From the NCBI GenBank assembly GCA_965603825.1, contig CBFDEM010000044.1:1-64000 (forward strand): DNA of 64,000 nucleotides, given 5' to 3'. The notes beneath the pieces were generated by a model. It had not been told where the DNA came from. It saw nothing but the letters and a program-made list of their open reading frames with translations, and ran no database searches. Positions 14,860 to 57,013 of the stretch are shown piece by piece. Source of the DNA: Blepharisma stoltei ATCC 30299 (taxonomy: Eukaryota > Protista > Ciliophora). Position numbers and translations under genes: made by a program. Each line of letters opens with the position of its first letter. Positions within the stretch are counted from its first letter, which is position 1.

Positions 14860-15310
14860 CTTATAATTAATTAAAAAAAATTTACAAAACTAACATTAGA
14901 AATGTCATTTACTTGCTTTATTCGAGTGAGTTTTAGAGATTTTAAAATTCATTAGGTGAAAAATCTTTATCTGATGCTTACGCAGCCTAGAATACTAAAA
15001 AGTAAAAGACTAAGGAAAAATATTTTAAGACAGTTCTAAAGAATTTTTCTATAAGGGACTAATTTTTAAATAGCTCTTTTACTTTAATACATAGGCATGG
15101 AAGGATAAATCAATAATGATTCTTACTATATATGCCTAAAAGAAGGGTTTTTTATTTATTGAAATTGATTTGAGATATCTTTCAAATTTTTATACTTTGC
15201 TATGAGATAACTCCTGCAGATATAAAAATTGTTCTTTTTATTGATAAAATCATATCAATGCTCTTCTTAAAATACAAAAATGGCATTTGAAGTCTATTAA
15301 ATAACTAGTT

Positions 15311-16535: not shown

Positions 16536-16712
16536 TTATTTAAAGCATTATTTATCATGCTTTACAGAGATCGTTATAACCTTTCTTTAAATTTATAAGA
16601 ATTGGATATATAAGTCAGTCATTATATAAAATTAACTCTCTTATAATAAGATCCTTGTCTTAAATATTTAAATTATTCTAGAAAATAAATGTAAAGGATT
16701 TATATTTGCTAT

Positions 16713-19406: not shown

Positions 19407-20145
19407 TTTATAGTTAATTATTAAAAAGATATATTTTATAGTTCATATTGGAAATGCTTTAATTTTTTTATCTCAGTAAGTGTTATATTTAGGACTTTAA
19501 ATAATTAGAAGCTGGAAATTTATCTGCCCTTGTATAGCAAAGCTTATCTGATGCCAAGGAATGAAAAAAAAACTTGCATAAACAGATTTTAAATATATTT
19601 TAGAAAATTATCAAGATGATTATGTATGATATAATTTATTTAATAATTTTAATTTAAGCTAAAATTAAAAAAAATTAATAGGCTTTTAGCTATAGATCAT
19701 TAAGTGATAGTCGGTTATGCAAAATTGAGCATTAAATTAGGATTTTAATAATCTTACCAAATCTTTACATTTAGCCTATGAAAATTTTATAAAATGCAAG
19801 CCTATGCTATTTCATTATGGAATTTTCAATATGTCTTTTTCTTAGTGAACAATATAAAGATGGCTATAAATTTTAAGCCTAGCTCCATCAGTAATTGTGA
19901 ATAATTTAGTATAAGTCAAACTGCATCATCTTAGATAAGAATCTTTTATTTAAGCCTTAAAAATGCACAAATTATAGTGTAGCTTGTAAAAATTAAAGAT
20001 CTGCTTAAAAATATTCGATTTTATCAAAATCTCGATACATATTTCGTTTTATGTATCTTAACTGAATCTATTTACTATTTAGCAAAAGCAAACACTATTA
20101 TCTAAGAGGGAAAAAAATTATATATAAATTTTTTATATTAGCAGT

Positions 20146-22875
20146 TTATTCATCCGATGGGGATGGTGGACTTGAATCTCCAGGTATGGAAGATACTGAA
20201 ATGATAGTCGGCGAATTATATTTCTTATGAAGAGGAGACTGTAAAAGCTTCAACTCCCTTGGTCTTCGAGAAATAATCGTTTGCTCTGTTATATATTTGA
20301 TCTGCTCTATATATTGTATCGACAGTGTTCTTCTATTCCCTTTCTTTGCAGGCTCTCCAGATGAAGGAATCCCAGTGCTTTCTTGAAGTTCCATATACAT
20401 TTCAATCCACTTTCCCAAGAGTACATTAAGTCGGTTGATTTCAGTTTGCTTTCGAGCAAGCTCTTTATTGCAGAGGTCCTTGAATTTCTCCAAATAAACT
20501 TTCCAGTGGTTCTTCTCAAGTGTATAGATTGATAAATTTTCTTTCTGGATATTTATAAGACGATCAGAAAGCTCTTGGTTTTCCTGCTTTAGCAGATCAT
20601 GGCTTTTATGAATCTGCACTTTGTAAATCGTTTGAATTTGCAAATCACTTTCAAGATTTCTCAGCTTAAATGGATCAACCTTTATTTCTTCTAATGTCCC
20701 TTTTTCTTCGCAATTTGAGTCAAAATCCTGAGACTGTTGTCTTTTCTTACATTCTGGCTGCATGCAAAATTTAATAGTGCGCGCTGGCTTCATTCTTCTG
20801 ACGAACTTTGGTTTGATTGTTTCTTCTCGAGGAACGCTTATAGGTTCTAATTTGCTTGCCAGGTTTACAATTTTTATATTTGTGAGATGCATTTGGTCTA
20901 AGCATGCTTCGAGCTGTTTAACTGAACTTTCTAGGTGACTTATTAGTTTGTTCTTCGAGGCCAGTTTTTCTGTAAGCATATTATACTTTCACTGGACATC
21001 ATAGTAGATTCTTAATAATTCGCAGTTTGCTAAGCCGGATTGGATCAGCTGAGTTTTTAGTTGATAAATAGTGGTTTCATTACTGATTTGACAGCCATCT
21101 ACAAGGGCTTCCTGCAAAGCCTTAGTGAATTTGTTATCTGATTTTAATATATCGTCAAAAGGAGTTTCAACAGCTTCATCTACTTCAGATATAAGTGTTT
21201 TATAAGGATTATCAATTGTGCTAAAGTTGTCATTATTAGCTTCTGGTAAGATTTCTCCATAATCCGACTCAGTTATAGTCTGGCCTGCAGCGATTTTACT
21301 TAGTAAATGATCCACTCTCTGACTAGATTTATTAAGGTAAAACTCAAGCATTTCGATGGTGTTCTTAAGATTTTTATTTTCATCCTTAAGATATTCAATT
21401 GAGTTTGCCTCATTGTTCTGCTTAAGCAACAGCCTTTGATACATCTCATAGTGTTGGCTGTCTTGAATTTCTGCCTGGATTCGCTTCTTTTTTTCATGAC
21501 TTAGCTCTTCTTCAAGCTCTTTTATAGTTTTGTTAAGGCTTATTTTTTCCTCTTGCAGATTGCCGAAGTCAGAGTTACATTGCATATACCCTTCCACAAG
21601 ATTTGAAAAAGTCGCTCCTTTTCCTATTCAGCACTGGCTTGAATTGTCGCTTTCTGAATAAGGAGAAGGAGGAATCTCGTCAGCCATTGCGGTAGAGGAG
21701 CTTTGAATTATGAGACAGCTAGATTTCATGAGTAATTCATCTTGCTCATTAATTAGCTTTTGGTTTTCCTCGCTTAAGTTTTGGACCTTCTGTCGTAACT
21801 CATTTATAATCTGAGCATAAGCTGCAGGAGATTTTTTGATATTTGGCTTCGCTTTGTTTTTTATATTTTTGACTCTTTGTGCAAACTTAAGAGTGCTCAT
21901 TGTTACTTCAAAATTTCGAGGGTGAGGACTGCAGTTGACGATAAGTGTGGTTTTGTAGTTTCCTCCGAGGGATTCTTTTAGAAGTCTCGTCAATTTTGAG
22001 TCCCTGTAGGGAATAAAATCTGCCTTACTTGACAGAGCGTTGATGACATTGCCGAGACAACTCAGTGATAAATTGATTTTTTTGGCTTCTTCCAATTTGT
22101 TTCCAGTAACTCCTGACTCTTTTACTTTTTCGCTTCCAGCAAGGTCGATAAAGTTCATAACTCCTCTTTTTTCGGTGTCATCAGGCAACTTTTGGCCAAC
22201 TTCCAAAACAAAAAGCTGATGACTTCTTGAGCTGACTTGATTTAGCTTGGTTGAAGCTACAGTCCTTTTACTTTCAGCAAGAGCAATTACATTCATTAGT
22301 TCCTCTTCACAGACTACATAAACTTCTTCAAGTCCTTGAACAAATACGCCTTTTCTCGGGTCTTCTTTTATTTTAAGTTTGGCACCGGAGTTTGAAAGCA
22401 GATCTCTGAGGCTTTCTTTATAAATTTCTATAATAGAACACTTCAAAGAATATTCTATTTCACTGTTTGACTCTTGCAGCTTGCTAAAAATTAGATTCGT
22501 TGCCCTGGGGATAATTCCTTTTGTATCAGAATCATAGATGTTTAAGCCCATCATTGTATAAGACTTACCTGAGCCTGTTTGCCCATAGGCAAAAACGGTA
22601 CCATTATAGCCTGATAATATGTCTTCTATAATTGGTTTACCAACAACATTGAAAATTTCCTCTTGGGAGGTAGTAGGTGGAAAAACACGGTCCAATGTAT
22701 AAGATTCAGTATTGTCAGGTGACTTTTGGACCATGACAGTTGATGGGTGTGGGAAGGCATAATATTGAGTTTCATCGTTTTGGAACGGATCAATCAGTGG
22801 CCTAAATCTAGCATATGCTTTAATTCCGATGCCTTTGTCTTTTCTAATAGCTTGAACAGAAGCTTTCCTACTCAT
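20146..22875 (-). CDS. Kinesin B' : kinesin-1-like motor plus coiled coil; intact, 909 aa with two UGA-Trp codons
   Basis: ORFs 21628..22875, 20989..21597 and 20146..20979 are in frame and joined by UGA. P-loop, SSRSH and DLAGSE are intact. Confidence 0.92.
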
Positions 22876-28841: not shown

Positions 28842-30170
28842 ATGAACATAATCTGAATCACATTACTTGCATATGCCTACGGGACTTTTATAATCGGGGT
28901 AAGCAATGCTAACCCTTTTGCATCTTGTGGGAACACCTTTTTTGGCTATGAAGTCGATATAGTTAGGGAAGCCTTAACAATAAGTGGATGAACTTATGGG
29001 ACTGACTATGTTTTTGCATGCAGTGATTCAGGCCAAAATGCTACAGTTGGCCGCCAATTAATAAGTTCCAGTGGAATGGGAGATGGCTACACTTATTCTC
29101 TCCCTACTTATAATGGCCAATTGAGTATTTTGATATACCAAGATCGCCATTTCAACACTCTTTCAACGTTAACTGTATTTTCGACATGGCTGTGACTATC
29201 TTTTGTCTTAACTGCAGGAGTGGTAGGCTTGCTAATCTGGTTTATGGAAAGCACAGAGAAATCCAATGTAATTTTGATCACCAAAGAATTTTTAAATAGC
29301 CAATGGATCACTTTTCAAGGTCTTTTCTTTTCAACGACGAGGAGGCTTAGTGCTCGCTCAAACTGGGTCTTGATGTGGACGTTCTGGGGCCTAGTTTATG
29401 CTTTTACAGCGTTATTTATAGCTACTTGTGTTTATCAAGCTATTCTTGTATACAGGCCGATAACATATCCTGAGAAGCTGAACGGTAAGAGATATTTGAC
29501 ATCAACAACCTATTTAAGCTTTACAAGTCATTACTCTGGGTATCATACTGAGCAAGAGATATCGCTAGATGACTATGATCAGCAAATAAAATTGCTAAAA
29601 AATAAAGAAATTGACGCAATTATATTTGAGAGGGAAGTGCTTAAAAAAATAGCAGCCACAAACTGTGATTACCAAGTAGTAGGTGATCCATTCATATCTA
29701 TTCTCTATGCCGTAAAAATTGAGCCTGGGACCGATTCTTCATTAAAAGCAGCACTTGATAATGGGATTACTTTGCTAATGGAAACCGCCAACCTGCAGAC
29801 AATCAAGGAAACCTATACATCAGTGAGCGATCCCTGTGCAATTTCTAATGACCCGAACGCCATAAGCCTCTATTCTTTTGGCGAGCTTTGGATTACAATT
29901 GGGGTTTCAGTCGTTTTTGTGTTCCTGCTGAGAAGTTTTTTAAAGAAAAACGAGCTGTCAAGAGAGAGGAGAAAGCACATTGAAGAGGTCAAAACTTTGA
30001 TGTCGAGGCCTGAGACTAAAATTTTAAGAGTCACTGAAAAACAAGTCAGAGAAAGCGAAATCGAAATGACTAAGCTATTGCACGATATTGAAAAAAGCTT
30101 GAAACGGCAGAACTCCTTACAGTCTCAAATGACTAATATGCTGAGGCATAGGGAAATTCTACTTAAATAA
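28842..30170 (+). CDS. Ionotropic glutamate receptor-like channel without amino-terminal domain, 442 aa
   Basis: ATG at 28842 is in frame through three UGAs. Signal peptide, S1 (PF..GYEVDI, YSLPTY..QLSILI), M1 (FSTWLWL..VGLLIWFME), pore/M3, S2 (IDAIIFE, YQVVGDPF, LDNGITLLME) and M4 (ISLYSFGELW). Confidence 0.75.
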
Positions 30171-37682: not shown

Positions 37683-39164
37683 TTAAGGCAAAGTGTCTTG
37701 GGATGTCTTTATGATGACCGTTTTGCATTCTAAATAGTTCGCAAGCCCTTCTTCTGTGACTTCTCTTCCTACTCCTGACTGTTTGAATCCTCCAAATGGA
37801 GTGTTTTCTGTTGTGTAATCATAACAGTTTACGTAAACGCTCCCTGCGCGGACTCCGTTTACAATTTTAATTGCTTTTTCTAGGCTAGTGGTTTGGACGC
37901 CTGCCCCAAGGCCGTATTTTGTATCATTTGCCCTTTTTATGACTTCGTCTATTGTTTTGAATTTTAAAATAGACATAAATGGACCGAAAATTTCTTCTCG
38001 GGCTATGCTCATATTGTCAGTTACATCAGTAAAAATGATTGGCTCAAGGAAATATCCTTTGCTTCCCCAGCGGTTTCCTCCGATTACAAGTTTTGCTCCT
38101 TCCATTTTGCCTTTGTGGACATATCCCAAAATCTTTTCTAATAAGCTTTCCTCTATTTGTGGACCTGACTGGGTTTCAGGGTCTAGTGGGTCACCAATTT
38201 TTCTTACCTTAGCCAACTCTACAGACTTTTCAAGGAATTTGTCATAAATTCCTTCTTGAACATAGACTCTGCTCCCTGCAATGCAGCATTGTCCGACAGC
38301 ATCAAAAATCCCAGTATGTGCATTTGTAACGGCACAGTCTAAATCTGCATCATCAAGAATTATATTTGGGCTTTTCCCTCCACATTCTAATGAAACTCTT
38401 TTCAGACCATTCATGCCTGCATTTCTTTGGATTTCTAGTCCTACTTCAGTTGAGCCTGTAAATGCAATTTTATCGACCCCAGGATGAAGTGTCAGATCTC
38501 TCCCTACGTCTCCAAATCCTGGTAAAATATTAACTACTCCTTCTGGAAACCCAGCTTCTACTATTAAATCGCCGATTTGTAAAGCAGTTAGTGGGGTCTG
38601 TTCTGCTGGTTTTAGTATCATGGTGCAGCCAGCTGCTAGTGCAGGAGCCATTTTCCAGCACTGCATAAGTAAAGGATAATTTCAAGGGATGATCTGTGCA
38701 CATACCCCGACTGGCTCATATCTTGTATAGCAATTATAAGGGCCTGTAATTGGGATTGTTTTTCCTCTGATATTATTAGCTAAACTTGCGTATTGGCGGT
38801 ATGTGTCTATTGTTAAAGGTAAATCTACATATGTAGTGTCAGTGATTGTTTTGCCTCCGTCAATTGTTTCTAATTTAGCGAGGTTGGCTTGGTTTTTTAT
38901 GATTAAATCAGTGAGTTTATGGATCAATTGGCCGCGCTCTCGGCCGCTCATTCTTCGCCATGGGCCATTATCATATGCGGTTCTTGCTGCTTTTACAGCT
39001 AAATCGACATCTTCTGTGCTTGCTCTTTGGACTTCAGCAATGACTTCTTCAGTTGCAGGGTTTATAGTTTTAAAGGTTTGGCCTGACTTAGAATTAACCC
39101 ACTTGTTGTCAATAAATAGCTGTGTCCTTAGGTGAGAAATTAATTTTCTGCTTGATGAGATCAT
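37683..39164 (-). CDS. Aldehyde dehydrogenase, ALDH1/2 family, copy 1
   Basis: IIP(UGA)NYP joins two ORFs. KPAEQTP, FTGSTEVG, LECGGKSP, GQCCIAGSR and EEIFGP. Confidence 0.95.
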
Positions 39165-39322
39165 TTTATTTCTAAAATTTAATTTTTCCACAAATAATAT
39201 ATTTTGAATTTTTATAATGAATATTAGGTTTTTTAGCTTAAATTTGGGAATAACTATTCCTAAGATAATTTCCTCGTTTATGCTAATTAACGATTAATTA
39301 TTTTAATATCATTAATAAAGCT

Positions 39323-40807
39323 TTATGGAAGGGTGTCAGCAGAATTCTTGATTATTACTGTTTTGCATTCTAAGTATTGGTAAAGTCCATCCTCACCTAG
39401 CTCACGGCCAAACCCAGACTGCTTATATCCACCAAACGGCGTATTTTCAGTCTGATAATCATAACAATTCACATAAACAGTTCCCGCTTTCATTGCATTA
39501 GTCACCTTAAGCGCTTTTTCAATATCCATAGTCTGCACACCAGCCCCAAGACCATATTTTGAGTTATTTGCTCTACTAATCACCTCATTAATATCTTTGA
39601 ACTTCAATATGCTCATAACAGGCCCAAAAATCTCTTCTTTGGCAATCGTCATCTCATCTTTCACATCAGTAAAAATAGTGGGCTCTACGAAATAGCCTTT
39701 ATTTCCCCATCTATTCCCTCCTGTCACAAGTTTGGCTCCTTCACTTTTGCCTTTCTCTATATATCCTAATATTTTTTCCATCTGAGTTTGATCTACTTGC
39801 GGACCATGATGGGTTCTTATATCCATTGGGTCTCCAAGGAGCCTTGCCCTGGCCATATATACAGAATTTTCAATGAACTGATCATAAATCTTCTCATGGA
39901 CATAAACTCTGGTCCCCGCAATACAAGACTGCCCCATATTCCCAAAAACTCCAAAATGGGCACACGCAACTGCGCACTCCATATCACAGTCATCAAAAAT
40001 AATATGTGGGCTTTTCCCTCCACATTCTAAAGAAATCCTTTTCAGCCCTTTTGTCCCTGAGTTTCTCATAACTTCGCATCCGACTTCAGTTGAGCCTGTA
40101 AATGCAACTTTGTCAACCCCAGGGTGTAAGGTTAATGCCCTTCCCACATCTCCATACCCTGGTAGTATATTAATAACGCCTTCAGGGAATCCAGCTTGAA
40201 TAATGAGTTCTCCAAGTTTTAAAGCTGTCAGAGGAGTCTGCTCAGCAGGCTTCAATACAAGTGTGCACCCAGCAGCAAGTGCAGGTGCCATTTTCCAGCA
40301 CTGCATCATCAGAGGATAATTCCACGGGATTATTTGAGCACAGACCCCAACTGGCTCATATCTAGTATAACAAGTATAAGGGCCTGTGATTGGGATTGTT
40401 TTACCTCTGATATTATTTGCCAGTCCTGCGTAGTATTTATAGAAATCAATAGAAAACGGAAGATCGATCGTTGTGACATCTTTAATTGGCTTGCCGGAGT
40501 CAATGATTTCTAAAGTGCTCAGAGGGCTGAAGTTGTCTGCGATTAGATCGCTGAGCTTCAGTATTAAATTTCCACGCTCTTTTCCGCTCATTCTTCTCCA
40601 TGGTCCTTTATCAAATGCAGTTCTGGCTGCTTTTACAGCTATATCGACGTCGGCTTCGTTGGATTGCTGGACTTCAGCAATGACTTCTTCAGTGTAGGGG
40701 TTGATGGTCTTGAAGGTTTGTCTGGATTTGGAATTGACCCATTGGTTGTTGATGAACAGTTGGGTTCTTGCAGAAGATATAACCCTTTTAGGTAGTGATC
40801 TTAGCAT
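39323..40807 (-). CDS. Aldehyde dehydrogenase, ALDH1/2 family, copy 2
   Basis: Complete ORF with IIPWNYP, FTGS, ECGGK and GQSCIAG. Confidence 0.96.
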   Translation of the reverse strand: MLRSLPKRVISSARTQLFINNQWVNSKSRQTFKTINPYTEEVIAEVQQSNEADVDIAVKAARTAFDKGPWRRMSGKERGNLILKLSDLIADNFSPLSTLEIIDSGKPIKDVTTIDLPFSIDFYKYYAGLANNIRGKTIPITGPYTCYTRYEPVGVCAQIIPWNYPLMMQCWKMAPALAAGCTLVLKPAEQTPLTALKLGELIIQAGFPEGVINILPGYGDVGRALTLHPGVDKVAFTGSTEVGCEVMRNSGTKGLKRISLECGGKSPHIIFDDCDMECAVACAHFGVFGNMGQSCIAGTRVYVHEKIYDQFIENSVYMARARLLGDPMDIRTHHGPQVDQTQMEKILGYIEKGKSEGAKLVTGGNRWGNKGYFVEPTIFTDVKDEMTIAKEEIFGPVMSILKFKDINEVISRANNSKYGLGAGVQTMDIEKALKVTNAMKAGTVYVNCYDYQTENTPFGGYKQSGFGRELGEDGLYQYLECKTVIIKNSADTLP

Positions 40808-40926
40808 TAGTAATGAAATAAGAAAAAATGTGGAATTATGTAGGGAACTTGTGAATAATTATATGATTGTATATTAGGGTATATAGGACATAAATTTTGC
40901 TATTAGAATTGGATTTTATCATTAAA

Positions 40927-42426
40927 TTATTTCTGATCTGGATCATCATGTATCATTTCATTTACGTTCTTGAGAAGTACTGTCTTGGCTTCAAGATAGT
41001 TATAAAGTCCTTCTTCTCCCAGCTCACGCCCTACACCTGACTGCTTATACCCTCCAAAGGGTACGTTTTCTATTTCTAAGTCATAGCAGTTGACATATAC
41101 ACTTCCAGTCCTAATTCCATTAGTAACTTTTAGTGCTTTATCAATATCCTGCGTTTGTACTCCAGCCCCCAGCCCATAAGGCGAGTTATTTGCCCTTTCA
41201 ATTACATCATCAATATCCTTAAACTTCAAAATGCTCATCACAGGCCCAAAAATCTCTTCTTTAGCAATCGTCATTTTATCTTTCACATCAATAAATATAG
41301 TAGGCTCCACAAAATAGCCTTTATCTCCCCATCTATTGCCTCCAAGCACCAGCTTGGCTCCTTCACTTTTCCCTTTTTCGATATACCCCAGGATTTTTTC
41401 CATTTGGGCTTTGTCTACTTGTGGTCCATGCTGGGTTTCTGGGTCCATTGGGTCTCCAATTTTTCTAGCTTTGGCGGCTTCAATGGTTTTATCAATAAAC
41501 TTTTTATAGATTTTTGAGTGGACATAAACCCTGCTACCAGCTACACAGTTCTGCCCCATATTCCCAAAAGCTCCAAAATGGGCACAAGATACAGCATTTT
41601 CTAGGTCACAGTCATCAAAAATAATATGTGGGCTTTTCCCTCCACATTCTAATGTAACCCTCTTAAGCCCATTAGTCCCTGCATTTTTTTGAACTTCTAA
41701 GCCTACTTCTGTTGACCCAGTAAAGGCGATTTTATCCACCTCAGGGTGCAAGGTTAGTGCTTTTCCAGCATCTCCGAATCCAGGCAAAATATTGACAACA
41801 CCAGGTGGGAAGCCAGCTTTAATTATAAGTTCTCCTAGTTTTAAGGCTGATAGAGGTGTTTGTTCTGCAGGCTTTAAAATAAGGGTGCATCCAGCAGCTA
41901 GTGCTGGAGCCATTTTCCAAGCTTGCATAAGGATTGGGTAATTCCATGGGATGATCTGGGCACATACCCCAACTGGCTCATATCTTGTATAGCATGTAAA
42001 AGGGCCTGAGATAGGGATTGATTTTCCTTTTATATTATTAGCCAGGCCAGCGTTATACTTATAAGTATCAATTGTAAAAGGCAAGTCACCGTTTCTTATA
42101 TCAGAAATTGGCTTGCCGGAATCCATTACTTCTAAAGCTGCTAGCTCTTCAAAGTTAGCAGATATTAATTTGCTTAAACTGTAGAGGAGTTCTCCTCGTT
42201 CTCTTCCACTCAATCTTGACCATACTCCTTTTTCAAGGGCTTTTCTGGCTGCTTTTACAGCAATATCGACGTCTTCTTCGTTTGCCTGCTGGACTTCAGC
42301 AATAACCTCTTCAGTGGCAGGATTTATGGTCTTGAAGGTCTGTTGTGACTTTGAATTTACCCATTGGTTGTTGATAAATAGCTGGGTCCTAAGAGTTGAA
42401 TTGAGTCTTTTCAGAATTGACACCAT
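40927..42426 (-). CDS. Aldehyde dehydrogenase, ALDH1/2 family, copy 3
   Basis: Complete ORF from the first ATG at 42426, with IIPWNYP and GQNCVAG. Confidence 0.96.
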   Translation of the reverse strand: MVSILKRLNSTLRTQLFINNQWVNSKSQQTFKTINPATEEVIAEVQQANEEDVDIAVKAARKALEKGVWSRLSGRERGELLYSLSKLISANFEELAALEVMDSGKPISDIRNGDLPFTIDTYKYNAGLANNIKGKSIPISGPFTCYTRYEPVGVCAQIIPWNYPILMQAWKMAPALAAGCTLILKPAEQTPLSALKLGELIIKAGFPPGVVNILPGFGDAGKALTLHPEVDKIAFTGSTEVGLEVQKNAGTNGLKRVTLECGGKSPHIIFDDCDLENAVSCAHFGAFGNMGQNCVAGSRVYVHSKIYKKFIDKTIEAAKARKIGDPMDPETQHGPQVDKAQMEKILGYIEKGKSEGAKLVLGGNRWGDKGYFVEPTIFIDVKDKMTIAKEEIFGPVMSILKFKDIDDVIERANNSPYGLGAGVQTQDIDKALKVTNGIRTGSVYVNCYDLEIENVPFGGYKQSGVGRELGEEGLYNYLEAKTVLLKNVNEMIHDDPDQK

Positions 42427-43661: not shown

Positions 43662-46600
43662 TTATTTGCCACTGATCAGTCTGTTGATTTTGACTTGCTG
43701 CGAGTCCCTCAGCGTTCTCCAGGCTTCTGCGAAAACTGCTGACTGCCTGCTATTAAGCCTCATCAGTATTTCTTTGATTTTCCCAGTTGTCTCAGCTTCA
43801 ATATACTTGGTTTCCAAAGCGTCGCTTAAAATATGTAGGACTTTGAGCATCCTTTCACCGTTTTCTCCTAATGCAATATTTTCAGAGCTTATCACAAGGT
43901 CAGCTAAAACGTCATTCATATATTTAGCCTCCATTTTGTCGAATTTGATAGGTAGCAGCTCAATAAAGGCAGGGACTACAATTGCCATGTCTAAGTTCAT
44001 ATGCTGGAATTTTATTACCCGTCCCATTGCGGCGACTGCGTTATCTCGGGCATAGCCATGGGATTTTGTATTTTTCTCACAAGCCACTTGTAAAGATTTT
44101 TCTATAGCAGAAATCACAAATGGGACCCAAGGCTTGAATCCCTCTGGGCTTGTATTTGCAGCAAAAATGCCAAGACCATAGCAAGCTGCTTGTCTGACTG
44201 CGTCATTTGTGTCTGTAGCAAATTTCACTAGGACTTCTCCAATTGCGTTTCAATAGTCTTTTATTAAGTTTTGGCCTAAAAATTCAATGATATCGTCAAG
44301 AATAAAAATGACCAATTTATGGTCTTCGTCAAGTGCTTCTTGTGAGAGCAGCTTTGGGAAGGTATTTGTCATTAGATAATTTATGATAGGCAAACTCTTT
44401 TCTTTTTGGGTTTTAAATATCACTCCAAGTACCTCTGATATAGCTGTATGCAAGTTGTCTTCTTCGCCTTTCCGGTATTCGTTATAAGCTTCGTCTTCTT
44501 CTTCGTCGCTGTTTTGTGCCACATTTCTATTTTGGATACTTTTTTGTAGCAGCTTTATCAGTTTTTCTCCCATAGAAGTGACGTCAGTTTGGGTAAGATA
44601 TGGGACTCCAGTGATGTCTATTATTTTTTTGATAGCTTTAAGCTGGTCAGTTTCTGCTTCACAGACGTATTCTTCTTCGACAGCATGCCAGAGAAGCTTT
44701 AAAAAGACTTGGGATAGGTGCATAGTATCCTGGACTGCGTTTTGTTCGCCACTTAAGAACTTTACCTCTATAAGTCCTGCTAGTAAACTGGCAGCTGCTC
44801 CTCTGACTGATTCATTCAAATGGAAATGCATCATAGGGACAGCCACTCTTACCACTGAGTCAATATATTTAGAAAACTGCCCTTTCAAAGTGGTCACAAA
44901 GGACAATAACGTTTGCATTGCCAGCTCTTTGTTTTCGGTAATAGTCGTACTCACTGTCGCTTTTTGTTCGCCTAGCTCTTTGTGAATGTCTACAAAGGAG
45001 TCTGGGTTGGTATAGACGTGGATTTCCATCTGTCTATCTACCATCTGTATAAGTCCAGGGACAACTTCATCTAAATAGCCAGAAAAATCACTTTCCATAA
45101 TTTCACAAATTCTTTGCCAGCCGCTTAGCAAGTACCCGACCAGTTGATCGCTGTTTTCTAGGTCTCCTTCTTGCATATTTTTCATAATGTTTATAATAGG
45201 CTCAGCATGCAGCATGAAAACTTCTTTTTCTACATTTTTGCTCATTGACATGATGCACTCAATGACTCTTCCCCTTAGTGTTTTGTAGTAGTCTTCTTTG
45301 TATTTTTCAAATAAACTTAAAAGATAAGGCATAATTATGATATAATCATCCTTAAAATAGTCTTTGCAGGAGGTTGCAATTGCAGCGATTGCAGTGCAGG
45401 ACTGTTCAACAACAATGGATGGGCAGTTTTGTGACAGAAATGTGATTAGTTTTGGGATAAAAGCGACAGCATAGGATGAAGCAAGAGAAATTCCTGCATC
45501 TCTAATGAACTTACTGATTGCCAGGCAGCAGTGAGCGACAACTCTAGGAGTTGAATCATTTAGACCTTCTACAAGTATTGGGTATATTTTTTCATGGTGA
45601 GATGATTGGAATTCTTGAGGGTAGTCTTGGCTGGCTTCTCCAATTAAATGAAAGACCGCGTATCTTACCTTAGGATTTTGTGATTTCGAAAATATGGTCA
45701 AAAAATGGACAAGCTCAGTAATTTTTTCTGGCTCTGAAATATAATTCAATATCTCGCTCAATGCCATCAGCGCTACATAAGTCATTCTTCAGTCATTTTC
45801 AGCACTTAAAGCTTGCTGTATCAATCCCAGCGTCGGATCCAACAAATACCTATCTCCTACCGCCTCTATAAGCCTAGAAATCAATCTTCTGCCTATTTTG
45901 GCATAGTCCATTTCCAGGTCTCCTTCTTCGTCATCTTTATCCTGAAACCCTTCTTCAGGCACTTTTCACGCCTCATCGATTTCTTGGTCAATCCCAACCA
46001 TCATTTCCATAATCTTCGAAATCGTCTGAACTGCCAGCTGGACATTCTGATGTATTACCTTTGGCATCCTTTCACATACGCATACAATGAATTCCAAGGC
46101 TAAATTTTTGCTTGAAATATCAAGGCCTTGTTTATTACAAAGGTGATGGATCAGCTCAAAACAGTGTAGAATGGACGGTTTAAATATTTTTGGCTCACTG
46201 TCTACAAGTTCTCGGAGGAGCTCTAAAGATTTATTTCCTGTGTATAAGTCTATAGAAAGAATATAGTCAATGGACTTTAGGATGTCAGGGACAAGATCTT
46301 TATAATATAAAGCGGTGGCTGTATCTACTATTGAGAGTAAAGAATTTACTGCTTTTAGGCAGGAGGATCGGGTAGAGATGTCTTCGTCGTTTAAAGCGAC
46401 CTTGAAGACTTGGAAAATCTTGTCGTTGCTATCCATGAATTGGTCAAATAAGTAAGGGAACAGTGTTGCTAATACTTCAAGAGCGGAAACTCTGAGCTGC
46501 CCACTGGCTTCTAAAGATCGGTATATGAAAGGTAGAAGCTCATCCCAAGTGCCATTTTTGCCTTCAGAAATCAAGATATTTGAGCCTAGCAGGCCTACAA

Positions 46601-46943
46601 CTTCACAGATATGCTCTCTGATTTTTCTATTTTCTTCGTTAGAAATTTTGTCAAGCAGCATTTGTTTAGCTAAATTTTGGACTTCTAAAGGTAGTTTATT
46701 TCATATGTCGTGCGTAGTGATTGGGGCGACTAGTTTTTTAAGTAAAATGCTTGACAGAGTTTTGACTGATAAATCAGTATTATTCAGATTATAAACTAAG
46801 CACATAAACAGCTTCCCAGGCTGCTGCTGAAGAGCAGCGTTATATTGAGCTTCACACTGCTTTCGAAATGTGTTATTCGATGCCAGAACTCCTGCTAAAA
46901 GCTGAGAAACCTCCTGGATTTCCGCCTCTGTCACTTGTTCCAT
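43662..46943 (-). CDS. Importin-5 / karyopherin beta-3-like HEAT-repeat protein, ~1093 aa
   Basis: Four ORFs in one frame joined by UGA (DI*NKL, DEA*, END*R, DY*N). Motifs PKVRYA, LRGRVIEC, W.RIC..M..DF..YL..VVP, VRQAACYGLG and ARDNAVAA. Confidence 0.9.
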
Positions 46944-48163: not shown

Positions 48164-49603
48164 ATGGCAAGTGAAGGGTCAGAAGAAATAGTAAAATTAA
48201 TCCAAAAAGTAGATCAAGCAGGACAATCTCACATACTGCATTACTTAGGAGAATTGGATCGAGAAAAAAAAGAAACCTTATTAGAAGAAATAAAAAGCGT
48301 TGATTTCGGGCTAGTTAGCGAACTCTACAAAACTCATCATGTCGAAGGAGTCAAACAAGCTGAAGAAATCATAATCGAGCCATACCCAAATATCCTAGAC
48401 ATCAGCACTCTATCAAAACAACACCTAAAGAACCTTCACAAAGATGGACTCAAACTGATTGCAGAAGGCAAAGTAGCCGTTTTAATGTTCGCTGGAGGCC
48501 AAGCTACACGTCTCGGAGTTTCTTACCCTAAAGGAATGTATGATATCGGACTACTATCTCACAAATCTCTATTCCAAATTTATTCAGAAAGGCTTATCTC
48601 TCTTCAAACTCTTGCATCAGAATCTTTATCATCCCCAGCCCCACCCATTCCTTGGCTAATTATGACAAACCAAGAGTCCTTGCTGCTTATCCAAAGCTAT
48701 TTCCGCTCAAATGCTTATTTTGGCCTAGACCAGTCCCAGCTTTTTTTCTTCCCCCAAGAAATGCTCCCAGCTATTGATTTTGATGGAAAAATCCTCCTCT
48801 CCCAAAAAAACAAACTCAGCTTGTCCCCTAATGGCAACGGTGGGGTATACGAAAGTTTAGAAAAATCAGGCGGCTTATTGTGGCTCGAAAACAAAAGAAT
48901 TAAATTTTTGCACATTTGTGGAGTTGACAATGCTTTGCTTAAAATTTGTGACCCAAAGTTCATTGGGTATGCAGAAGACCAAGATGTAGATGTGGTAAGT
49001 AAAGTTGTGGCAAAAAAAAGCTATAATGAAGCATGTGGAGTTTTGGCGATGAAAAATTCAAAGCTTTGTGTGGTAGAATATAGCGAGCTTAGTGAAGAAA
49101 TGGCCAAATCAGTTGATGAAGAAGGCAAACTGAGGTATTTTGGCGGAAATATTTTGAATCATATTATGAAAGTTTCTTTTATTAGGAGAATTGTGAGTAA
49201 CCATTTATCTGAATTAAGGTCAAAATACCATGTGGCTAGAAAAAAGGTACCGCATATTGAAAATGGGCAGGTAGTCACTCCGAATGTCCCAAATGCGCTT
49301 AAATTTGAGCTATTTTATTTTGACGTGCTAGAATTAGCAGAATCTTCGGCTGCACTATGCTGTGATAGAGACAGCGAATTTTCTCCTGTAAAAAATGCAA
49401 GCGGTCCTGATAGTCCTGAATCAGCAAGAACATTGATAAATAATTTACACTTAAAATGGGTGGAAAAAGCAGGAGGGATTTTACCACAAGGAATTCCTGA
49501 TGGAATTGTATGCGAAATTTCTCCTTTGGTCTCTTATGATGGTGAAAATTTGAAATTCTTGGAAAATAAAAAAATTTCTCTTCCGTTTTACCTTTATTAC
49601 TAA
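48164..49603 (+). CDS. UAP1: UDP-N-acetylglucosamine pyrophosphorylase
   Basis: AGGQATRLG..PKG, SPNGNGG, VDN, VVEYSE, KFELFYFD and EFSPVKN. Confidence 0.95.
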   Translation: MASEGSEEIVKLIQKVDQAGQSHILHYLGELDREKKETLLEEIKSVDFGLVSELYKTHHVEGVKQAEEIIIEPYPNILDISTLSKQHLKNLHKDGLKLIAEGKVAVLMFAGGQATRLGVSYPKGMYDIGLLSHKSLFQIYSERLISLQTLASESLSSPAPPIPWLIMTNQESLLLIQSYFRSNAYFGLDQSQLFFFPQEMLPAIDFDGKILLSQKNKLSLSPNGNGGVYESLEKSGGLLWLENKRIKFLHICGVDNALLKICDPKFIGYAEDQDVDVVSKVVAKKSYNEACGVLAMKNSKLCVVEYSELSEEMAKSVDEEGKLRYFGGNILNHIMKVSFIRRIVSNHLSELRSKYHVARKKVPHIENGQVVTPNVPNALKFELFYFDVLELAESSAALCCDRDSEFSPVKNASGPDSPESARTLINNLHLKWVEKAGGILPQGIPDGIVCEISPLVSYDGENLKFLENKKISLPFYLYY

Positions 49604-49679
49604 CTAAAACATTCTTTATACCATTCATAGAATTAAGTTTTATAGACATATTCAGCTGAATTTAATAATAAGATTAGCC

Positions 49680-52160
49680 TTAATATAGTTCTCTTGACTT
49701 GGGCCAATCTTCAGCTGGCTTCCCTTTTTCTTCGATGTATCTCTTTATAGAAAGAGATGGCCCATCTTCGTGTATATCGGTAAGCGCTTTTTCTAAAAAT
49801 TCTTTAGCTTCTTCCCATTGCCCGGAAATATAGTCTACATAAGCATGCCTAAACGAGTCAAAGAAATGCTGTGGAATATCTTGTTGCAGTCCTGTGATAT
49901 CAGAATCCAAAGTAAACATATAATCCACACCTTTATGCTGGAAATTCTCAACATTGACTGCATCAAGCTTGGCTAACTTAATTAATTTCCCAATATAATG
50001 AGTATCTGGGGCTGGGAGCTCTTTTTCCGTGATATCAAAAGTATACAACCCAAATGTATTTGGTAAATAATTTACATAAACAGTGTCAATCCTTCTGCAG
50101 CAGTTTTTGGCTTTGACTGACAAGTAGCCATAGAAGTCTTCACTCATAAGAACAGAGCAGCCATATTCTTTTCTAGCTTCTACTAAGTTGTACCCAACTG
50201 AGATGTGAGGGGATAAATAAGCTGGGTCAATTTTGAAGTCAGAGCCAATCACCCCTTCTATAGCCCAGCCTATGTGGATTCCAATGGTTAAGTCTGGGGA
50301 AAAAGTAGGCCCAAATCGAGAAATAATTCTGGGGTGAACTTTATATGCCTGGATTTCTGCAGATCTCCTGATTTCAGCTATAGTCTTTATAGTAGAAACT
50401 AAAGCACGATTAGCGAGATCAGTGCGCTGCATAGCAGGATTGGATAAATCGTCTTCATCAGTGTCCTTTTCACTAACTTCTGGAAGCTTCCAGACCAGCA
50501 AAAATGACCCTTGAATGTTTTTAGATACTAATCCGCCCCATTCTTTGCAGCATGTATGTATAACATTGCTAAGTTTATTTATAAAAATATGGGACTCCTC
50601 CTGCAAACATTCAGAAACCAACGTAAAATTTTCTACTTTTATTACCTGAATTACCAGTGATACTTTATTTCCAGGCCTCATCAAATTAAGCTCCCCTTCC
50701 CCACTGGTAATATTTTTGCTTAAAATATCAGCACCATCTTCCCCAAAAGACAGCTGCAATAGTGCACTTATTTTTGCAACGGTTTCTTCTAGCATATATG
50801 TTGACTCTTCTTTCCTTATATCAGAATCTTCAGTTTTTTCTTCTTTTTCGATCCTTTTCAAAGGATCGTCAGCCAAAGTTTTGATAATTAAAACCATTCT
50901 CGTAATAGGCCCAATCAGGATTTTTTGTGTATCTGCAGTAAACATGACCGCAGCTACAGTCAAAATCAGCCCTACAAAAAGGGTCGTAAAAATGTTCATC
51001 AAAGCGTCGTTTTCGCTTTGGGTTTTTATATCAAATCTAGCATAAGCTTGCAGGTTCTCACACCCTGAAACTGTTTTGTCTTTGCATTCATCAGGAGTAT
51101 ATACAGCCAGCAGCATTTCGACATCTCTTAGGTTGCATTCAGAGCCGACAGTCTTTCCTGAGCAGTTTTCATCCTGTGTTCATGCAATGCCCGAAAGATC
51201 GCTTTTTTTAATAGACCTGATTTCATGGATTTCTCCATTTTGAAAATAATCTGGCAAATACATCCATAAGAGAGGGTATTGGGCGCTTTTCCCATCAGTT
51301 TCTATTGTGCATAATGTATAGCGATATACAAGCTCATATCAGCCAAAACTTGTCTCCCAATTAATATTATTAGGATCGTCACAGAGAAATTGGTCAGTAT
51401 TAGTGCAGGAACTCCAGCCCATTCAAAAGAGCTGCTGGAGGCCATATTTTGGAGCGTTATCAGTTTCTAAAACTTGCATAATAGGGATAAAAATGACCAT
51501 CAGCAGCACCACAATGATCACTCTTCTCGTCGTTGTGTCCGAAAGAATCTTCCCTAGTCTTGTAGGGTCCATTTCTCTATTCATCGCGGCTTGTTTTGCA
51601 GTTTTTGCTAACTTCTGAGCTTGTTTCAGCCTCATTTCTTGTTCTTCTGTATCTCTTTTGGTCACATATTTATAAAGTTTCACTATTCTGACCAACCTAA
51701 TAAGCCTAAACGACTTCAACACCTTTTTCGCAATATTTTGCCCTGACTGACTTTCCCCAGTCGAAGTGTTCACAGTGACATCAGCTGAATAAGGCAGCCC
51801 TCCAAATAGAACCGTGATGTAGTTAAAAAAGAAAGGGATGTCTGGGATAAGCGAAATAGCAGCAATTATGTCCAATCAGAAGAAAAATGAATACTTATAG
51901 TCGTCGACGGCTATGCTGTTTAGGAAGATATCGAGTATGAACAAGCCAAGCATGATGACGTAAGAGACGTAGAAAGCGGTATCTGCGTCTTTGTCTGTGG
52001 TTAGAAGCCGTATATCATCTCCAAACAGGGCTCAAAGGGTAGCACTTGTCATGAGCAAAGTTACGAGTTTTCCATCCAGGATGTCTCGAAGACGCTGCCT
52101 TATCTTTGTGTCTTCGTCTTCAGGTCTGCCTGATCTCGGTTTTTTAGCAGAAGTACTCAT
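49680..52160 (-). CDS. Voltage-sensor / class III nucleotide cyclase fusion (alveolate channel-AC type), catalytically degenerate, ~826 aa
   Basis: One frame from ATG 52160 through UGAs. Motifs W(UGA)ALFGDDIR, FFFW(UGA)LDII, S4 KSFRLIRLVRIVKLYK, GKILSD.TTRRVII, G.H.GWAIEG.IGS.FKID..YLSP and a C-terminal TPR-like ..DGPS..W. Confidence 0.88.
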
Positions 52161-52208: not shown

Positions 52209-52874
52209 TTATTTTATAATGTTTCTTTTTCTCATCTCAACAGTGAAAAAATTTGTGAAAAGAGCGCCTATAATTCCACCCAAGGAAGGAGCAATAATGA
52301 AAATCCAAGTATTTTCAAAATGCGTCCCATGCTTGATGTAATAATATATATTAACTCCTAATCCAATTGCAGGATTAAAACACCCATTCGTTATATGCCC
52401 TACTGTAGAGATACTTCCAAAAACAGTCAGCACAATAGCAGCATTAAAAACCACTTTATCTATATGCCACATTTTTCCCATCATCACTGCGTTTGCACAG
52501 ATAAGCATTGTAAAAATCAGCTCAGCCCAAAAAGCCTGGGCAATTGAGTAGTCGTCTAAGGCATCGAAAAACATGTTGTGATGGACAATTCCCCATGCGC
52601 ATAGAGCGGAAAATAAAGCCGCTATAAATTGGGTTACAATGTATAAGAGTGCATCAGTCACATCTATTTTTGAGACTTTTTTATTTAAATATTTGTCATA
52701 GAGAAGAGCAATTGTTACAGCTGGGTTGAAATGAGCACCTGAACACAATCCAGAAATACCTTGGCCACATCAGATAGCACCACATACAGCAAAAGGTTCG
52801 CCACCACTTACACCTGAAGTAAAAACTATTAAAAAGACTCCTGCGAACTCAGCACAAAGGCGTCTGAAAAGCAT
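52209..52874 (-). CDS. Aquaporin / MIP channel
   Basis: ATG at 52874, AEFAG, one UGA, SGAHFNPAVT and GCFNPAIG. Confidence 0.92.
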
Positions 52875-54972
52875 GGGCTAGTTAATTATGGATTTTTAAT
52901 ATTAAATGAGTATAAAATATAATACTTATTTTAAGCTAACTATTTAAATGCTATTTGCAATTTGTTTGCTATATGCAAATGCCTTTATTATTCACAAACA
53001 ATTTTAAAGTCTGACAATTGCATTTCCTCTTACTAAGCTTAATAATAAAAATGGTGGAAAAAGTTGTGGGAAAATACAGTTAAACATATCCGAGAGTTTA
53101 TCGGGATAATGTAAAAATAAGAGAGATTGACTTCTTTTGAAGTGGTAGGCTTAATTTAGAATATATTATTTTATAAAGTCTCTTTTATTCATCTCTGCAT
53201 TGAAAAATTCGTGAAAGAGCTCCTATAATTCCATATAAAATTCTATTCCTCCTAGAATCATTTCGTCCTACTATTCCGTATTGGTGGATAAAGGAACTCA
53301 TAATAAATATTGCGGAGGAAGAAACCATTTCATGCATAGGCATTTTCTTCTTATTCCTCTTCAATCGAAAGAAAATCAAATCTTATATATAATTTTCAAG
53401 TTTCTATGATTTTACTAAACTCCTGCATTAGGAAATTATTAAAATCAGGTGATCCGTAATTAATCCACTATTTATTGAGAGAATGAGAATAAAAAAATTA
53501 AAATGTTCAACAGACCCTATGCTCAGCTAATTATAATTCAATGAGCAGCCAGCTCATAGTCAGCTACTAAAAGTAAAAAACAGCATCTCAGAAATAAATG
53601 ATAAAAAATGCTTATCAAGCTATTAAATATAGAAAACAGATTGATAAATTATTTAAGCAACAGAAAGTATAAATCAGAAGTTTGAGCGCCCCTTTTTAAA
53701 AAAAATGAAGGATATCAATACTAAAATCCAAAATTTGAGCTTTTTTTAGAGAGCGAGCAGATTTCTTTTCTCTAGTTATTTATTTTCACGTGAATTTTTA
53801 ATTCTGCAGCATCTGGAACTGGTTGATAATTTTATGCACCTAATATAGCCCAATTGAAGCTCCATCTCTTGCAATTGGTTCGGGCCAAGAATATCACGAG
53901 CTGACAAATGTCAATTATGAGTACTTTTCAAATCGTGGAGTTGGCTTGATAAGTTTTAATGCCAAAATGAAAAATTAATTTTTATTTGAAATATGAAATT
54001 TATTGACAATTTAATCAATTAGAGGCAAATTTAAAAGAATAGAGAGATCAAAAGCATAGATTAACTTAAGATTATATTATTTTGAATTTTTGATTTCATA
54101 AGTTAATATATAGAATTTGAAATGAAACGCAAAATTTGCCATTATCAGCAAAGCGAATTTTTCAATATGGATGCAAAAAATTGTTCAAGCTCTAATAAAT
54201 AGCTTTGGCTCCTTTTGAACCTCTTAGCTGATTTTTTATGAGAAATATTACTCATAGTTTATTATTTATAGACTCTCTTATTTTTTAAAATTAAACAGCT
54301 CCATTCTCAACCCTTAAACAACTTTATTAATAAATTTAGTAAATATTCTCCATAATAATTCATTAAAAATAAAACTTATAGCCTCAAAAGTGCGTACAAC
54401 TTCCTTAATTTACCTCTAAGTAAAGAGTTATTATTATAAAGAAGCTAATAAAAATATTCCATAAATAATCGTATACGAACTAACTCTGAAAGGAGAGAAA
54501 AAAGTAATATTCGGCTTGCTTAATAATTTTTACCTTGGGATATACTTTTTCTTTTTCTTATCTACCGACATAAATATTAGGATATTCAAATTCTGATATT
54601 TATTAAAGAAGCTGTTTTCTAAGTTTTTTGTCAATTTTTATTAATTTTAAATCCTTCAAAAATTCTGATTATTTATTTATATTTACCAGTAAAAATTTCT
54701 TTGATTATCGTTTGAATTCCTCATTTTCTTTCAAAAATCCTTTAAATAAAAATTTTTGTGAACAAATTAAAATTATGAATTCTGAGGCAAATTCTAGAAT
54801 ATTTCAATCATTCCTATCATTCTTAGGATATCGTTTATCAGATTTACTTAACTTTCCTCCACTGGACCATATTCGAATAATGAAAATGGATGGTATACAT
54901 TTGATTTAAAATGCCACAGACATCTATTTCTAACTACCAAATATTCACCGAATAGCCATTACATTATAATAA

Positions 54973-56020: not shown

Positions 56021-57013
56021 ATGGTATCAATTTGGCTCTTGATTTCTCTAATTGGAGTATCATATGCAGCATCCCCAATGTGCTATGCAGTCTCTATTGA
56101 AGGCGGCGGAAGCCATGGAGCATTTGAAGCTGGTGCTCTCTGAACTCTTGCCTACAACTCGACCCAAAATGTCCAATGGAATGTTGTAACAGGAATTTCC
56201 ACTGGAGCTTTAAACGCTGGAGGTTGCGCTCAATTTGCCCAAGGACAAGAAAAAGCAATGTCTGATTTTCTAATAAATACTTGGCTCACACTTAATGGCT
56301 CTGCTAGTGTTTTTGTGGAATGGGATGGTGGACTTGTTGAAGGCCTTTTGTTCCAACGTGGGGTTTATGATAACAAGCCACTTGTTAAGACTTTAAACTC
56401 AAAATTCATATATGGGGTTCATAGAAACATTACAATAGGCTCCACAAACTTAGACACTGGGCTTTTTGGGCAATTTAATGAAACTCTTGGGCCTCAAGGT
56501 CTCTTAACCGCTATTACTTGTTCTGCATGTCCTCCTTGGTACTTCCCTCCAACTAACTTTTTGGGCAGCACTTGGGTTGATGGAGGCGTCGTGATAAATC
56601 TCGATGTGTTTGCAGCTGTAAACAGATGCCTTGACGTTGTTTCTGACCAATCACAAATTGTTGTTGACTTAATTTATGATAGCACTAACTATACAATCCC
56701 AGCAGAAACTAATATGACTACTTTTGACGTGTTTAGACGAGTAAAAGAAATTAAAGACTATGATGGACAAATGTGGTTCTATTATAACGCAATTACGGCT
56801 TGGCCTAAGGTGAATTATAGATACGTCATTTTCCCTAGCCAAGCAATGCCTGGAGGTCCTGGAGTTCCACTTGACTTTAACCAAACAGTACTCGTAAATG
56901 AAGTAGCGCTTGGAAAGAGTGATACCCTTAACGTACTCAATAGCAAAGTTGATGGAAAAACGATTTTAATGCAAAGATATCACGAAAACAAGAGTAAAGT
57001 CATTTACCCTTAA
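56021..57013 (+). CDS. Secreted patatin-like phospholipase
   Basis: ATG at 56021, signal peptide, EGGGSHG oxyanion motif, one UGA, GISTG nucleophile and DGG. Confidence 0.9.

What the first reader, a model, noticed from the sequence alone, without database searches (positions are those of the whole stretch)
49680..52160. Voltage-sensor pseudo-cyclase: intact S4, all four catalytic residues lost
Seen: an intact ~826-codon gene with the layout of alveolate channel-adenylyl cyclases (S1-S4, TM helices, class III cyclase domain, TPR-like tail) and a fully charged S4 (KVLKSFRLIRLVRIVKLYK, ~51670-51727). Known: class III cyclases need two metal-binding Asp (family FCDIRNF and KNIGDAF) and the transition-state Asn/Arg (SPNVN.ASRLE). 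Here these read VIKVENF, KNIQGSF and SPHISVGYNLVE, while the purine-selecting Lys (SKNI) and Asp (FKID) remain. Inference: it can supply neither catalytic half, yet shows no decay. It could be a voltage-sensing regulatory or dominant-negative subunit of active channel-cyclases, or a nucleotide-binding sensor. An extracellular Cys-rich insert (~51040-51420) suggests ligand input as well.
Basis: partly seen in the sequence, partly recalled or inferred. Interest (0 to 1): 0.8.

Follow-up and report, generated by a model that had tools for sequence, protein, structure and literature searches.

The report
Ancient catalytically dead voltage-sensor cyclase
This ciliate gene makes an intact, transcribed and strongly conserved membrane protein built like a voltage-sensing cAMP-making enzyme but stripped of its catalytic residues, so it probably works as a sensor or regulator, and it belongs to an old subfamily found across alveolates for which I found no description.

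Summary
Real. The genome is Blepharisma stoltei (UGA=Trp). 52160-49680 (-) is an intact, intronless, transcribed 826-aa ORF: S1-S4, TM5, ~155-aa disulphide-type ectodomain, TM6, HAMP-like helices, class IIIb cyclase fold, TPR-like tail. Both metal Asp and the transition-state Asn/Arg are replaced (K508, G551, S654, N658). No decay: pN/pS 0.11 in the cyclase domain, like active pairs. It is not a one-off: four such genes in this genome, 33 of 33 heterotrich sequences dead, relatives in other ciliates, chromerids, a colpodellid, Perkinsus and Besnoitia; 1 of 74 ectodomain-bearing sequences keeps all catalytic residues, and non-ciliate members often keep one half-site. Most likely a non-catalytic sensor subunit signalling by protein contact; a dominant-negative heterodimer is the main rival. 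No paper found. The scan noted paralogues before on other DNA (s1-638801, s1-624686). Mechanism untested.

The parts
49680..52160 (-). Intact intronless CDS, 826 aa, UGA=Trp (five TGA codons at aa 43, 95, 246, 274, 327)
   Evidence: contigs of four RNA-like runs lie within 49651-52157 with no joints, two of them as one piece
51807..52079 (-). S1-S3 helices of the voltage-sensor domain, acidic counter-charges of S1, S2 and S3 kept
   Evidence: alignment; helices in the model of the twin paralogue; Ion_trans weak here (E 0.08), E 1e-4 in subfamily members
51666..51737 (-). S4: K146 K149 R152 R155 R158 K161 K164; six of the seven invariant in subclade A, K146 variable
51477..51554 (-). TM5
   Evidence: model helix 198-227 of the twin; alignment
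51006..51470 (-). Ectodomain, ~155 aa, six conserved Cys (252, 260, 333, 342, 359, 367); alpha/beta fold, only weakly Cache/PDC-like
   Evidence: model pLDDT 91; best PDB Z 4.0, many Cache/PDC domains among the top 50; no Foldseek hit; resembles ectodomains of other family members, TM 0.54-0.57
50925..51005 (-). TM6
50751..50924 (-). HAMP-like two-helix unit
   Evidence: profile hits Af1503 HAMP chains at E 0.27-1.3, 4 of 7 hits; Pfam HAMP in 5 of 50 members, best E 0.057; HAMP reported for Toxoplasma ACalpha (PMC11922314)
50676..50750 (-). Linker before the cyclase domain (position of the cyclase transducer element, inferred); holds the family GXG motif, here S471-F-G
   Evidence: Ser in 17/17 subclade A, Gly in 23/25 canonical; most conserved segment of subclade A (0.93)
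50025..50675 (-). Pseudo-cyclase domain, class IIIb fold: K508 (Asp1), K547 (purine Lys, kept), G551 (Asp2), A647 (purine Ser/Thr), S654 (Asn), N658 (Arg), N697 (phosphate Lys)
   Evidence: Foldseek to OaPAC E 6e-9, CyaB 2e-7, CyaC 2e-6; register; no Pfam Guanylate_cyc hit
49896..49985 (-). Subfamily-specific conserved tail motif (aa 726-755), shared by heterotrich subclade A and spirotrich-type members, absent from canonical paralogues
49683..49895 (-). TPR-like helical tail
   Evidence: TPR E 0.07-0.18 in close orthologues, 7e-5 in a subfamily member; helices in model

Best explanation
A catalytically dead, receptor-like member of the alveolate voltage-sensor/HAMP/adenylyl-cyclase family. 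Shown: intact, transcribed, conserved; complete sensor and transducer chain; no catalytic half-site. Inferred: it dimerises like other HAMP/class III proteins (with itself or with the sister pseudo-cyclase subclade B), takes input from the disulphide-rich ectodomain and from membrane potential through S4, passes it down TM6-HAMP-linker, and outputs by a shape change of the pseudo-cyclase and tail that is read by a partner protein, most plausibly a component of the cAMP system (active paralogue, phosphodiesterase or scaffold). Ligand, partner and location are unknown.
For: Six of seven canonical residues lost and the catalytic columns drift freely in 33 heterotrich sequences, while the domain stays under selection. 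What is conserved instead are signalling and contact elements: S4 (0.91), S4-S5 linker (0.84), pre-cyclase linker (0.93), the dimerisation-arm motif, an insertion after the beta-2/3 hairpin, and a 30-residue tail motif nearly identical between heterotrichs and spirotrich-type ciliates but absent from active paralogues. The ectodomain folds confidently and keeps six Cys across alveolates. All four ectodomain-bearing genes of this genome are dead, and both duplicate pairs were kept.
Against: No interaction, localisation, ligand or electrophysiology data. The Cache/PDC resemblance is at background level (Z 4.0). The HAMP-linker region of the monomer model is low confidence (pLDDT under 50). Conserved tail residues could be structural. 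The kept dimerisation arm fits a heterodimer with active cyclases equally well.
Confidence: 0.5

Rival explanations
1. Dominant-negative brake: it heterodimerises with active voltage-sensor cyclases. Because each class III active site takes the two Asp from one subunit and Lys/Thr/Asn/Arg from the other, a partner with neither half cripples both sites; its sensors may tune how much active enzyme is sequestered.
For: Nine paralogues with the full canonical set exist in the genome. The dimerisation-arm motif is the same as in canonical members. Half-site members (Asp-only or Asn/Arg-only) are common in the whole family, which suggests that mixed dimers are normal.
Against: Subfamily-specific conservation of linker, insertion and tail is not explained by simple poisoning; helix alpha-4 and the beta-2/3 hairpin, both in the interface (general knowledge of class III structures), have diverged from canonical paralogues.
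Confidence: 0.25
2. Nucleotide-binding sensor: the dimer still binds ATP or another nucleotide without metal, the Asp1-to-Lys/Arg swap supplying the positive charge.
For: Asp1 is Lys or Arg in 13/17 of subclade A and in all 7 aligned spirotrich-type sequences; the purine Lys is kept in 15/17 and 7/8; Asp2 is Gly in 17/17 of subclade A.
Against: Purine Ser/Thr, Asn, Arg and phosphate Lys columns are variable; in subclade B the purine Lys is kept in only 6/16.
Confidence: 0.12
3. Membrane-only role: ion or proton flux through the voltage-sensor domain, or assembly and trafficking of other membrane proteins, with the cytosolic part kept as a dimerisation scaffold.
For: S1-S4 and TM5 are the best conserved parts in both subclades. 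UGO of Toxoplasma is a precedent for a non-catalytic membrane cofactor of a cyclase (PMC6532924).
Against: No pore loop between TM5 and TM6, GXG motif lost; cyclase domain and tail are as constrained as the membrane part.
Confidence: 0.09
4. Residual or non-canonical cyclase activity.
For: Single losses of the purine Lys or the Arg only reduce activity in bPAC (PMC8522238). UniRef names the twin and the Stentor orthologues as guanylate cyclase domain proteins, an automatic label.
Against: Both metal ligands plus four other residues are gone; the bPAC K197A/D201A double mutant is inactive (PMC8522238); the substitutes are not conserved among orthologues.
Confidence: 0.03
5. Decaying pseudogene or misalignment.
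For: None beyond the missing residues.
Against: Open frame, transcripts in four runs, pN/pS 0.11-0.17 in the cyclase domain, orthologues in Stentor and other heterotrichs, register anchored on solved structures.
Confidence: 0.01

Closest known systems
Alveolate ion-channel/adenylyl cyclases (Paramecium AC1-4, Plasmodium ACalpha, Toxoplasma ACalpha1-3; Weber et al. 2004 as cited in PMC3283738, PMC5746546, PMC10587447, PMC11922314)
   Same: Same order of domains: S1-S4, two further TM helices, HAMP, class III domain, TPR tail; 31-37% identity to canonical paralogues over the C-terminal 499 aa; nested in the family tree.
   Different: Six of seven catalytic residues lost; GXG motif changed to SFG; S4 with fewer Arg; ectodomain enlarged to ~155 aa with six Cys; own tail motif.
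Class IIIb bacterial adenylyl cyclases (OaPAC, bPAC, P. aeruginosa CyaB, Spirulina CyaC)
   Same: Best structural matches of the cytosolic domain.
   Different: These are active homodimers with Asp, Lys, Asp, Thr, Asn, Arg, Lys; the query keeps only the first Lys.
C1/C2 half-site cyclases (mammalian membrane ACs, soluble guanylyl cyclase; from general knowledge)
   Same: Division of catalytic residues between subunits; non-ciliate members of this subfamily show Asp-only (Vitrella CEL96628.1, Alphamonas, Besnoitia XP_029218900.1) or Asn/Arg-only (Chromera Cvel_14802) patterns.
   Different: The heterotrich proteins keep neither half.
Toxoplasma UGO and Plasmodium GEP1 (PMC6532924, PMC9916804)
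   Same: Non-catalytic membrane proteins needed for the traffic or activity of an alveolate cyclase.
   Different: Different architecture, partner is the P4-ATPase-guanylyl cyclase, no voltage sensor; analogy only, no homology tested.
Cache/PDC extracellular sensor domains
   Same: Position between two TM helices ahead of a HAMP; long first helix, central sheet; roughly twenty of the top 50 structural rows are such domains.
   Different: Best Z only 4.0 with rmsd about 5, level with unrelated ribosomal proteins; no sequence match; disulphide-rich.

Membership tests
Alveolate channel-adenylyl cyclase (ACalpha type) | N-terminal S1-S4 voltage-sensor-like domain with basic S4 | tested here: met
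   seven basic i+3 positions, 3 Arg
Alveolate channel-adenylyl cyclase (ACalpha type) | Six TM helices followed by HAMP, class III fold and TPR tail | tested here: met
   HAMP and TPR signals are weak
Alveolate channel-adenylyl cyclase (ACalpha type) | GXG motif after TM6 (PMC3283738) | tested here: not met
   S471-F-G; Ser in 17/17 subclade A, Gly in 23/25 canonical
Alveolate channel-adenylyl cyclase (ACalpha type) | All canonical residues for cAMP synthesis (PMC5746546) | tested here: not met
   K508, G551, A647, S654, N658, N697; only K547 kept
Alveolate channel-adenylyl cyclase (ACalpha type) | Measured cyclase activity and K+ conductance | not testable with these tools
   needs assay
Active class IIIb adenylyl cyclase | Class III fold | tested here: met
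   Foldseek E 6e-9 to OaPAC, TM by target 0.79 to CyaC, on the 85% identical twin
Active class IIIb adenylyl cyclase | Two metal-binding Asp | tested here: not met
   K508, G551
Active class IIIb adenylyl cyclase | Transition-state Asn and Arg | tested here: not met
   S654, N658
Active class IIIb adenylyl cyclase | Adenine-selecting Lys plus Thr/Ser | tested here: not met
   Lys kept (K547), Ser replaced by Ala647
Voltage-gated K+ channel | Re-entrant pore loop with GYG/GFG filter between S5 and S6 | tested here: not met
   the S5-S6 segment is a folded 155-aa ectodomain
Cache/PDC sensor domain | PAS-like fold at significant structural or profile similarity | tested here: inconclusive
   Z up to 4.0, no Foldseek or Pfam hit, atlas TM 0.43 to sCache_4
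HAMP domain | Two amphipathic helices after a TM helix with conserved Pro and Glu | tested here: inconclusive
   register matches Af1503 HAMP at E 0.27; Pfam best E 0.057

The most novel reading that the evidence does not exclude
Alveolates have an ancient receptor subfamily in which a voltage sensor and a new disulphide-rich ligand-binding ectodomain drive a cyclase-fold switch: split into complementary half-enzymes that must heterodimerise in myzozoans (including a coccidian ACalpha), and turned into a wholly non-enzymatic voltage-and-ligand coincidence detector in ciliates, signalling through a conserved tail surface.
Probability: 0.25. Interest if true: 0.8.

Novelty: new variant of a known kind. 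Interest (0 to 1): 0.58.

Why it matters
How alveolate channel-cyclases sense their input, and whether they conduct ions at all, rests on few experiments (PMC3283738, PMC5746546). A subfamily that has kept the voltage sensor, ectodomain and transducer across ciliate classes while discarding catalysis separates sensing from cAMP synthesis and can be tested by RNAi in Stentor (SteCoe_36024, SteCoe_9391). It also shows that database labels overcount active cyclases (8 of 20 family genes here lack both half-sites) and suggests that one coccidian ACalpha may be only a half-enzyme, which bears on reading the mild single-knockout phenotypes in Toxoplasma.

Tried and rejected
Standard-code ORF listing broke the gene into pieces; code 4 restores it. 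Pfam and PDB sequence searches with the C-terminal 499 aa found nothing. A first mixture-model tree did not finish; FastTree and a quick LG+G4 tree were used, so deep nodes (82-97 SH-aLRT) are provisional. dS is saturated in all pairs, so pN/pS is quoted; it overstates dN/dS. The Asp1 and phosphate-Lys columns were off by one or two and corrected. Paper searches for pseudocyclase terms, for voltage-sensing or channel adenylyl cyclase terms and for the Stentor and Vitrella accessions gave nothing relevant; Weber 2004 was seen only as cited by others and one Toxoplasma paper sought by DOI was not held, so an earlier remark on degenerate members cannot be excluded. Left out: tools take no protein read through TGA by reference, so the gene was searched in pieces and both models were built on the twin paralogue (CAG9328635.1, 85% identical); a profile-profile comparison with a HAMP chain was skipped because that chain had no reference; no dimer model was possible. 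The large protein search was used once, because the ectodomain stayed unassigned after the family scans. Considered and rejected: misalignment, pseudogene, shift to guanylyl cyclase (no Glu at the purine Lys column, no metal ligands), functional link to the neighbours (UDPGP-family gene, aquaporin, patatin: syntenic in another UGA=Trp species, but not seen around the Stentor orthologue).

Full report
Source and gene. The window starts with a CCCTAACA telomere and reads with UGA as Trp. The closest paralogue in the same assembly is identical to Blepharisma stoltei CAG9328635.1, so the genome is B. stoltei. The stretch 52160-49680 on the minus strand is one open frame of 826 codons with five TGA codons and a TAA stop. 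Contigs from four RNA-like runs of one study lie on the gene and stop at its ends (one piece 49669-52156 in one run, 49651-52157 in another, split pieces in two), show no joints, and leave the intergenic stretch 52938-53500 empty; the neighbour carries a poly(A) end. The gene is therefore transcribed and intronless. The runs are only guessed to be RNA, and contig depth cannot rank expression.

Anatomy. A model of the twin paralogue (mean pLDDT 71.5) shows four helices S1-S4, TM5, an alpha/beta ectodomain, TM6 running into two helices, the cyclase fold and a helical tail. Foldseek matches the cytosolic part to class IIIb cyclases: OaPAC E 6e-9, CyaB 2e-7, CyaC 2e-6. The helices after TM6 match Af1503 HAMP weakly but in register; HAMP and TPR are already described for Toxoplasma ACalpha (PMC11922314). 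There is no pore loop between TM5 and TM6, and the GXG motif once proposed as a K+ filter (PMC3283738) lies in the cytosolic linker of the model and reads SFG here.

Catalytic residues. A canonical relative aligns to bPAC and CyaB without ambiguity at the catalytic motifs, and the family alignment carries the register to the query. Asp1 is K508, Asp2 is G551, Asn is S654, Arg is N658; these four columns are invariant in 25 canonical sequences. It aligns two places before bPAC T267, which is the base-recognition residue (PMC8522238); that column is Ser or Thr in 25/25 canonical sequences and Ala647 here. The phosphate-binding Lys is N697. Only the purine Lys, K547, remains. From established class III chemistry, each active site takes the two Asp from one subunit and Lys, Thr, Asn, Arg from the other, so this protein can supply neither half.

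Voltage sensor. S4 is basic at seven i+3 positions, six of them invariant in 15 full-length orthologues, and the acidic residues of S1-S3 are kept. It has 3 Arg where canonical Blepharisma paralogues have 5-7, so the sensor looks intact but lighter at its outer end; a shifted voltage response is an inference.

Selection. Against its twin (85% identical, syntenic duplicate) synonymous sites are saturated (pS 0.74) while pN is 0.089; pN/pS in the cyclase domain is 0.106, inside the 0.07-0.12 range of four pairs of canonical or near-canonical paralogues. A syntenic orthologue from another UGA=Trp species (823 aa, 78% identical) has the same substitutions at all four catalytic columns and pN/pS 0.17. 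A different dead pair in this genome (L018/L019) is looser (0.31), which shows that the test can tell the difference.

Family. The genome holds at least 20 voltage-sensor cyclases: nine with the full set, three with Asp2 changed to Glu or Gln, eight lacking both half-sites, the latter scattered over about four places in the tree. Exactly four genes carry the Cys-rich ectodomain, and all four are dead. They belong to a heterotrich clade (support 98-99) with two subclades; subclade A includes Stentor SteCoe_36024 and SteCoe_9391 and B. japonicum, subclade B includes Climacostomum. None of 33 sequences keeps Asp1, Asp2 or the Arg, and one keeps the Asn. Sister to them are ciliate genes on C4A4-telomere chromosomes with TAA/TAG as sense codons, with Asp1 as Lys or Arg, Asp2 mostly kept, Asn as Gln and Arg kept. 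Further out are Vitrella CEL96628.1, Alphamonas, Chromera Cvel_14802, Perkinsus chesapeaki and Besnoitia XP_029218900.1. Of 74 ectodomain-positive sequences with a complete cyclase domain (redundant, and biased towards query-like hits), 59 have neither half-site, 8 only the two Asp, 6 only Asn/Arg, and 1, a coccidian protein with a shorter ectodomain, has all. Half-site members are also frequent outside the subfamily.

Ectodomain. It models well (pLDDT 91), keeps six Cys, and wherever the hit protein was long enough to judge it sat in this architecture (192 hits among 1.8 billion representatives, most of them fragments). Structure search gives only background-level scores (best Z 4.0), though many of the top rows are Cache/PDC sensor domains; the atlas links it to the shorter ectodomains of other family members. 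A ligand-binding role is plausible from its position before TM6-HAMP but is not shown.

How it most likely works. What stays conserved is the chain from sensor to cytosol (S4 0.91, S4-S5 linker 0.84, TM5 0.90, pre-cyclase linker 0.93 in subclade A), the dimerisation arm, and a 30-residue tail motif shared with the spirotrich-type genes but absent from active paralogues, while the catalytic columns drift. That pattern fits a dimeric sensor whose output is a protein contact (0.5). A dominant-negative heterodimer with active paralogues is the main rival (0.25) and may coexist with it. Metal-free nucleotide binding through the Asp-to-Lys swap (0.12), a membrane-only role (0.09), residual catalysis (0.03) and decay (0.01) are less likely. 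None of the mechanistic steps was tested.

Novelty. The parent family is known, and pseudo-enzymes in expanded families are common. I found no paper describing non-catalytic channel-cyclases or this ectodomain subfamily, with the caveat that key subscription papers were not held. Databases label these proteins as cyclases. It fails the membership test for an active channel-adenylyl cyclase but descends from that family: a new variant of a known kind. First readers of this scan flagged two other dead paralogues on other contigs. Interest 0.58: a solid, old, testable pseudo-enzyme subfamily with an uncharacterised ectodomain, mechanism open.

Noticed in passing
G000:C31 21301-29825 (L017, L009), C14 (L018), C11 (L019), C55 (L020): Four more voltage-sensor cyclases lacking both half-sites, outside this subfamily; L017 lies in tandem with a canonical gene; L018-L020 lack the TPR tail.
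   Followed up: partly
P0241 (Besnoitia XP_029218900.1); P0204 (Chromera Cvel_14802); P0138 (Vitrella CEL96628.1): Myzozoan members keep complementary half-sites (Asp-only or Asn/Arg-only); a coccidian ACalpha appears to be a half-enzyme.
   Followed up: partly
P0171, P0174, P0177: Proteins of 1250-1290 aa that join a cyclic-nucleotide phosphodiesterase domain (PF00233) to this voltage-sensor cyclase; two of them have a dead cyclase domain.
   Followed up: no
G000: About 78 strong PF00211 domains, mostly in pairs 1.5 kb apart, apart from this family. A 2026 paper (PMC13466520) says B. stoltei has one P4-ATPase-guanylyl cyclase gene; whether these pairs are such fusions was not checked.
   Followed up: no
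all family members: The precomputed Pfam label PF26726 (Helical_RasGEFs) hits nearly every voltage-sensor cyclase, active or not; the name looks misleading for these proteins.
   Followed up: no
window 52209-52874 (-), 48164-49603 (+), 56021-57013 (+), 43662-46943 (-): Neighbours: aquaporin (MIP), UDPGP-family pyrophosphorylase ending 77 bases from this gene's stop, patatin, importin-beta-like; patatin, UDPGP and importin lie in the same order in L036.
   Followed up: partly
window 37683-42426 (-); 7605-22875 (-); 28842-30170 (+): Three tandem aldehyde-dehydrogenase-like ORFs, repeated kinesin-like ORFs, and a 442-aa secreted or membrane receptor-like ORF; named from the look of the sequence only.
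   Followed up: no
L029 1192-3695 (G000:C46 near 371-374 kb): Reverse-transcriptase-like ORFs next to the twin paralogue, at the break in synteny with the window; named from the look of the sequence only.
   Followed up: no
L030, L031: Both subclade B genes lie between an ARL3-like small GTPase gene and an EB1-like gene, so they are syntenic duplicates; the neighbours are named from the look of the sequence only.
   Followed up: no
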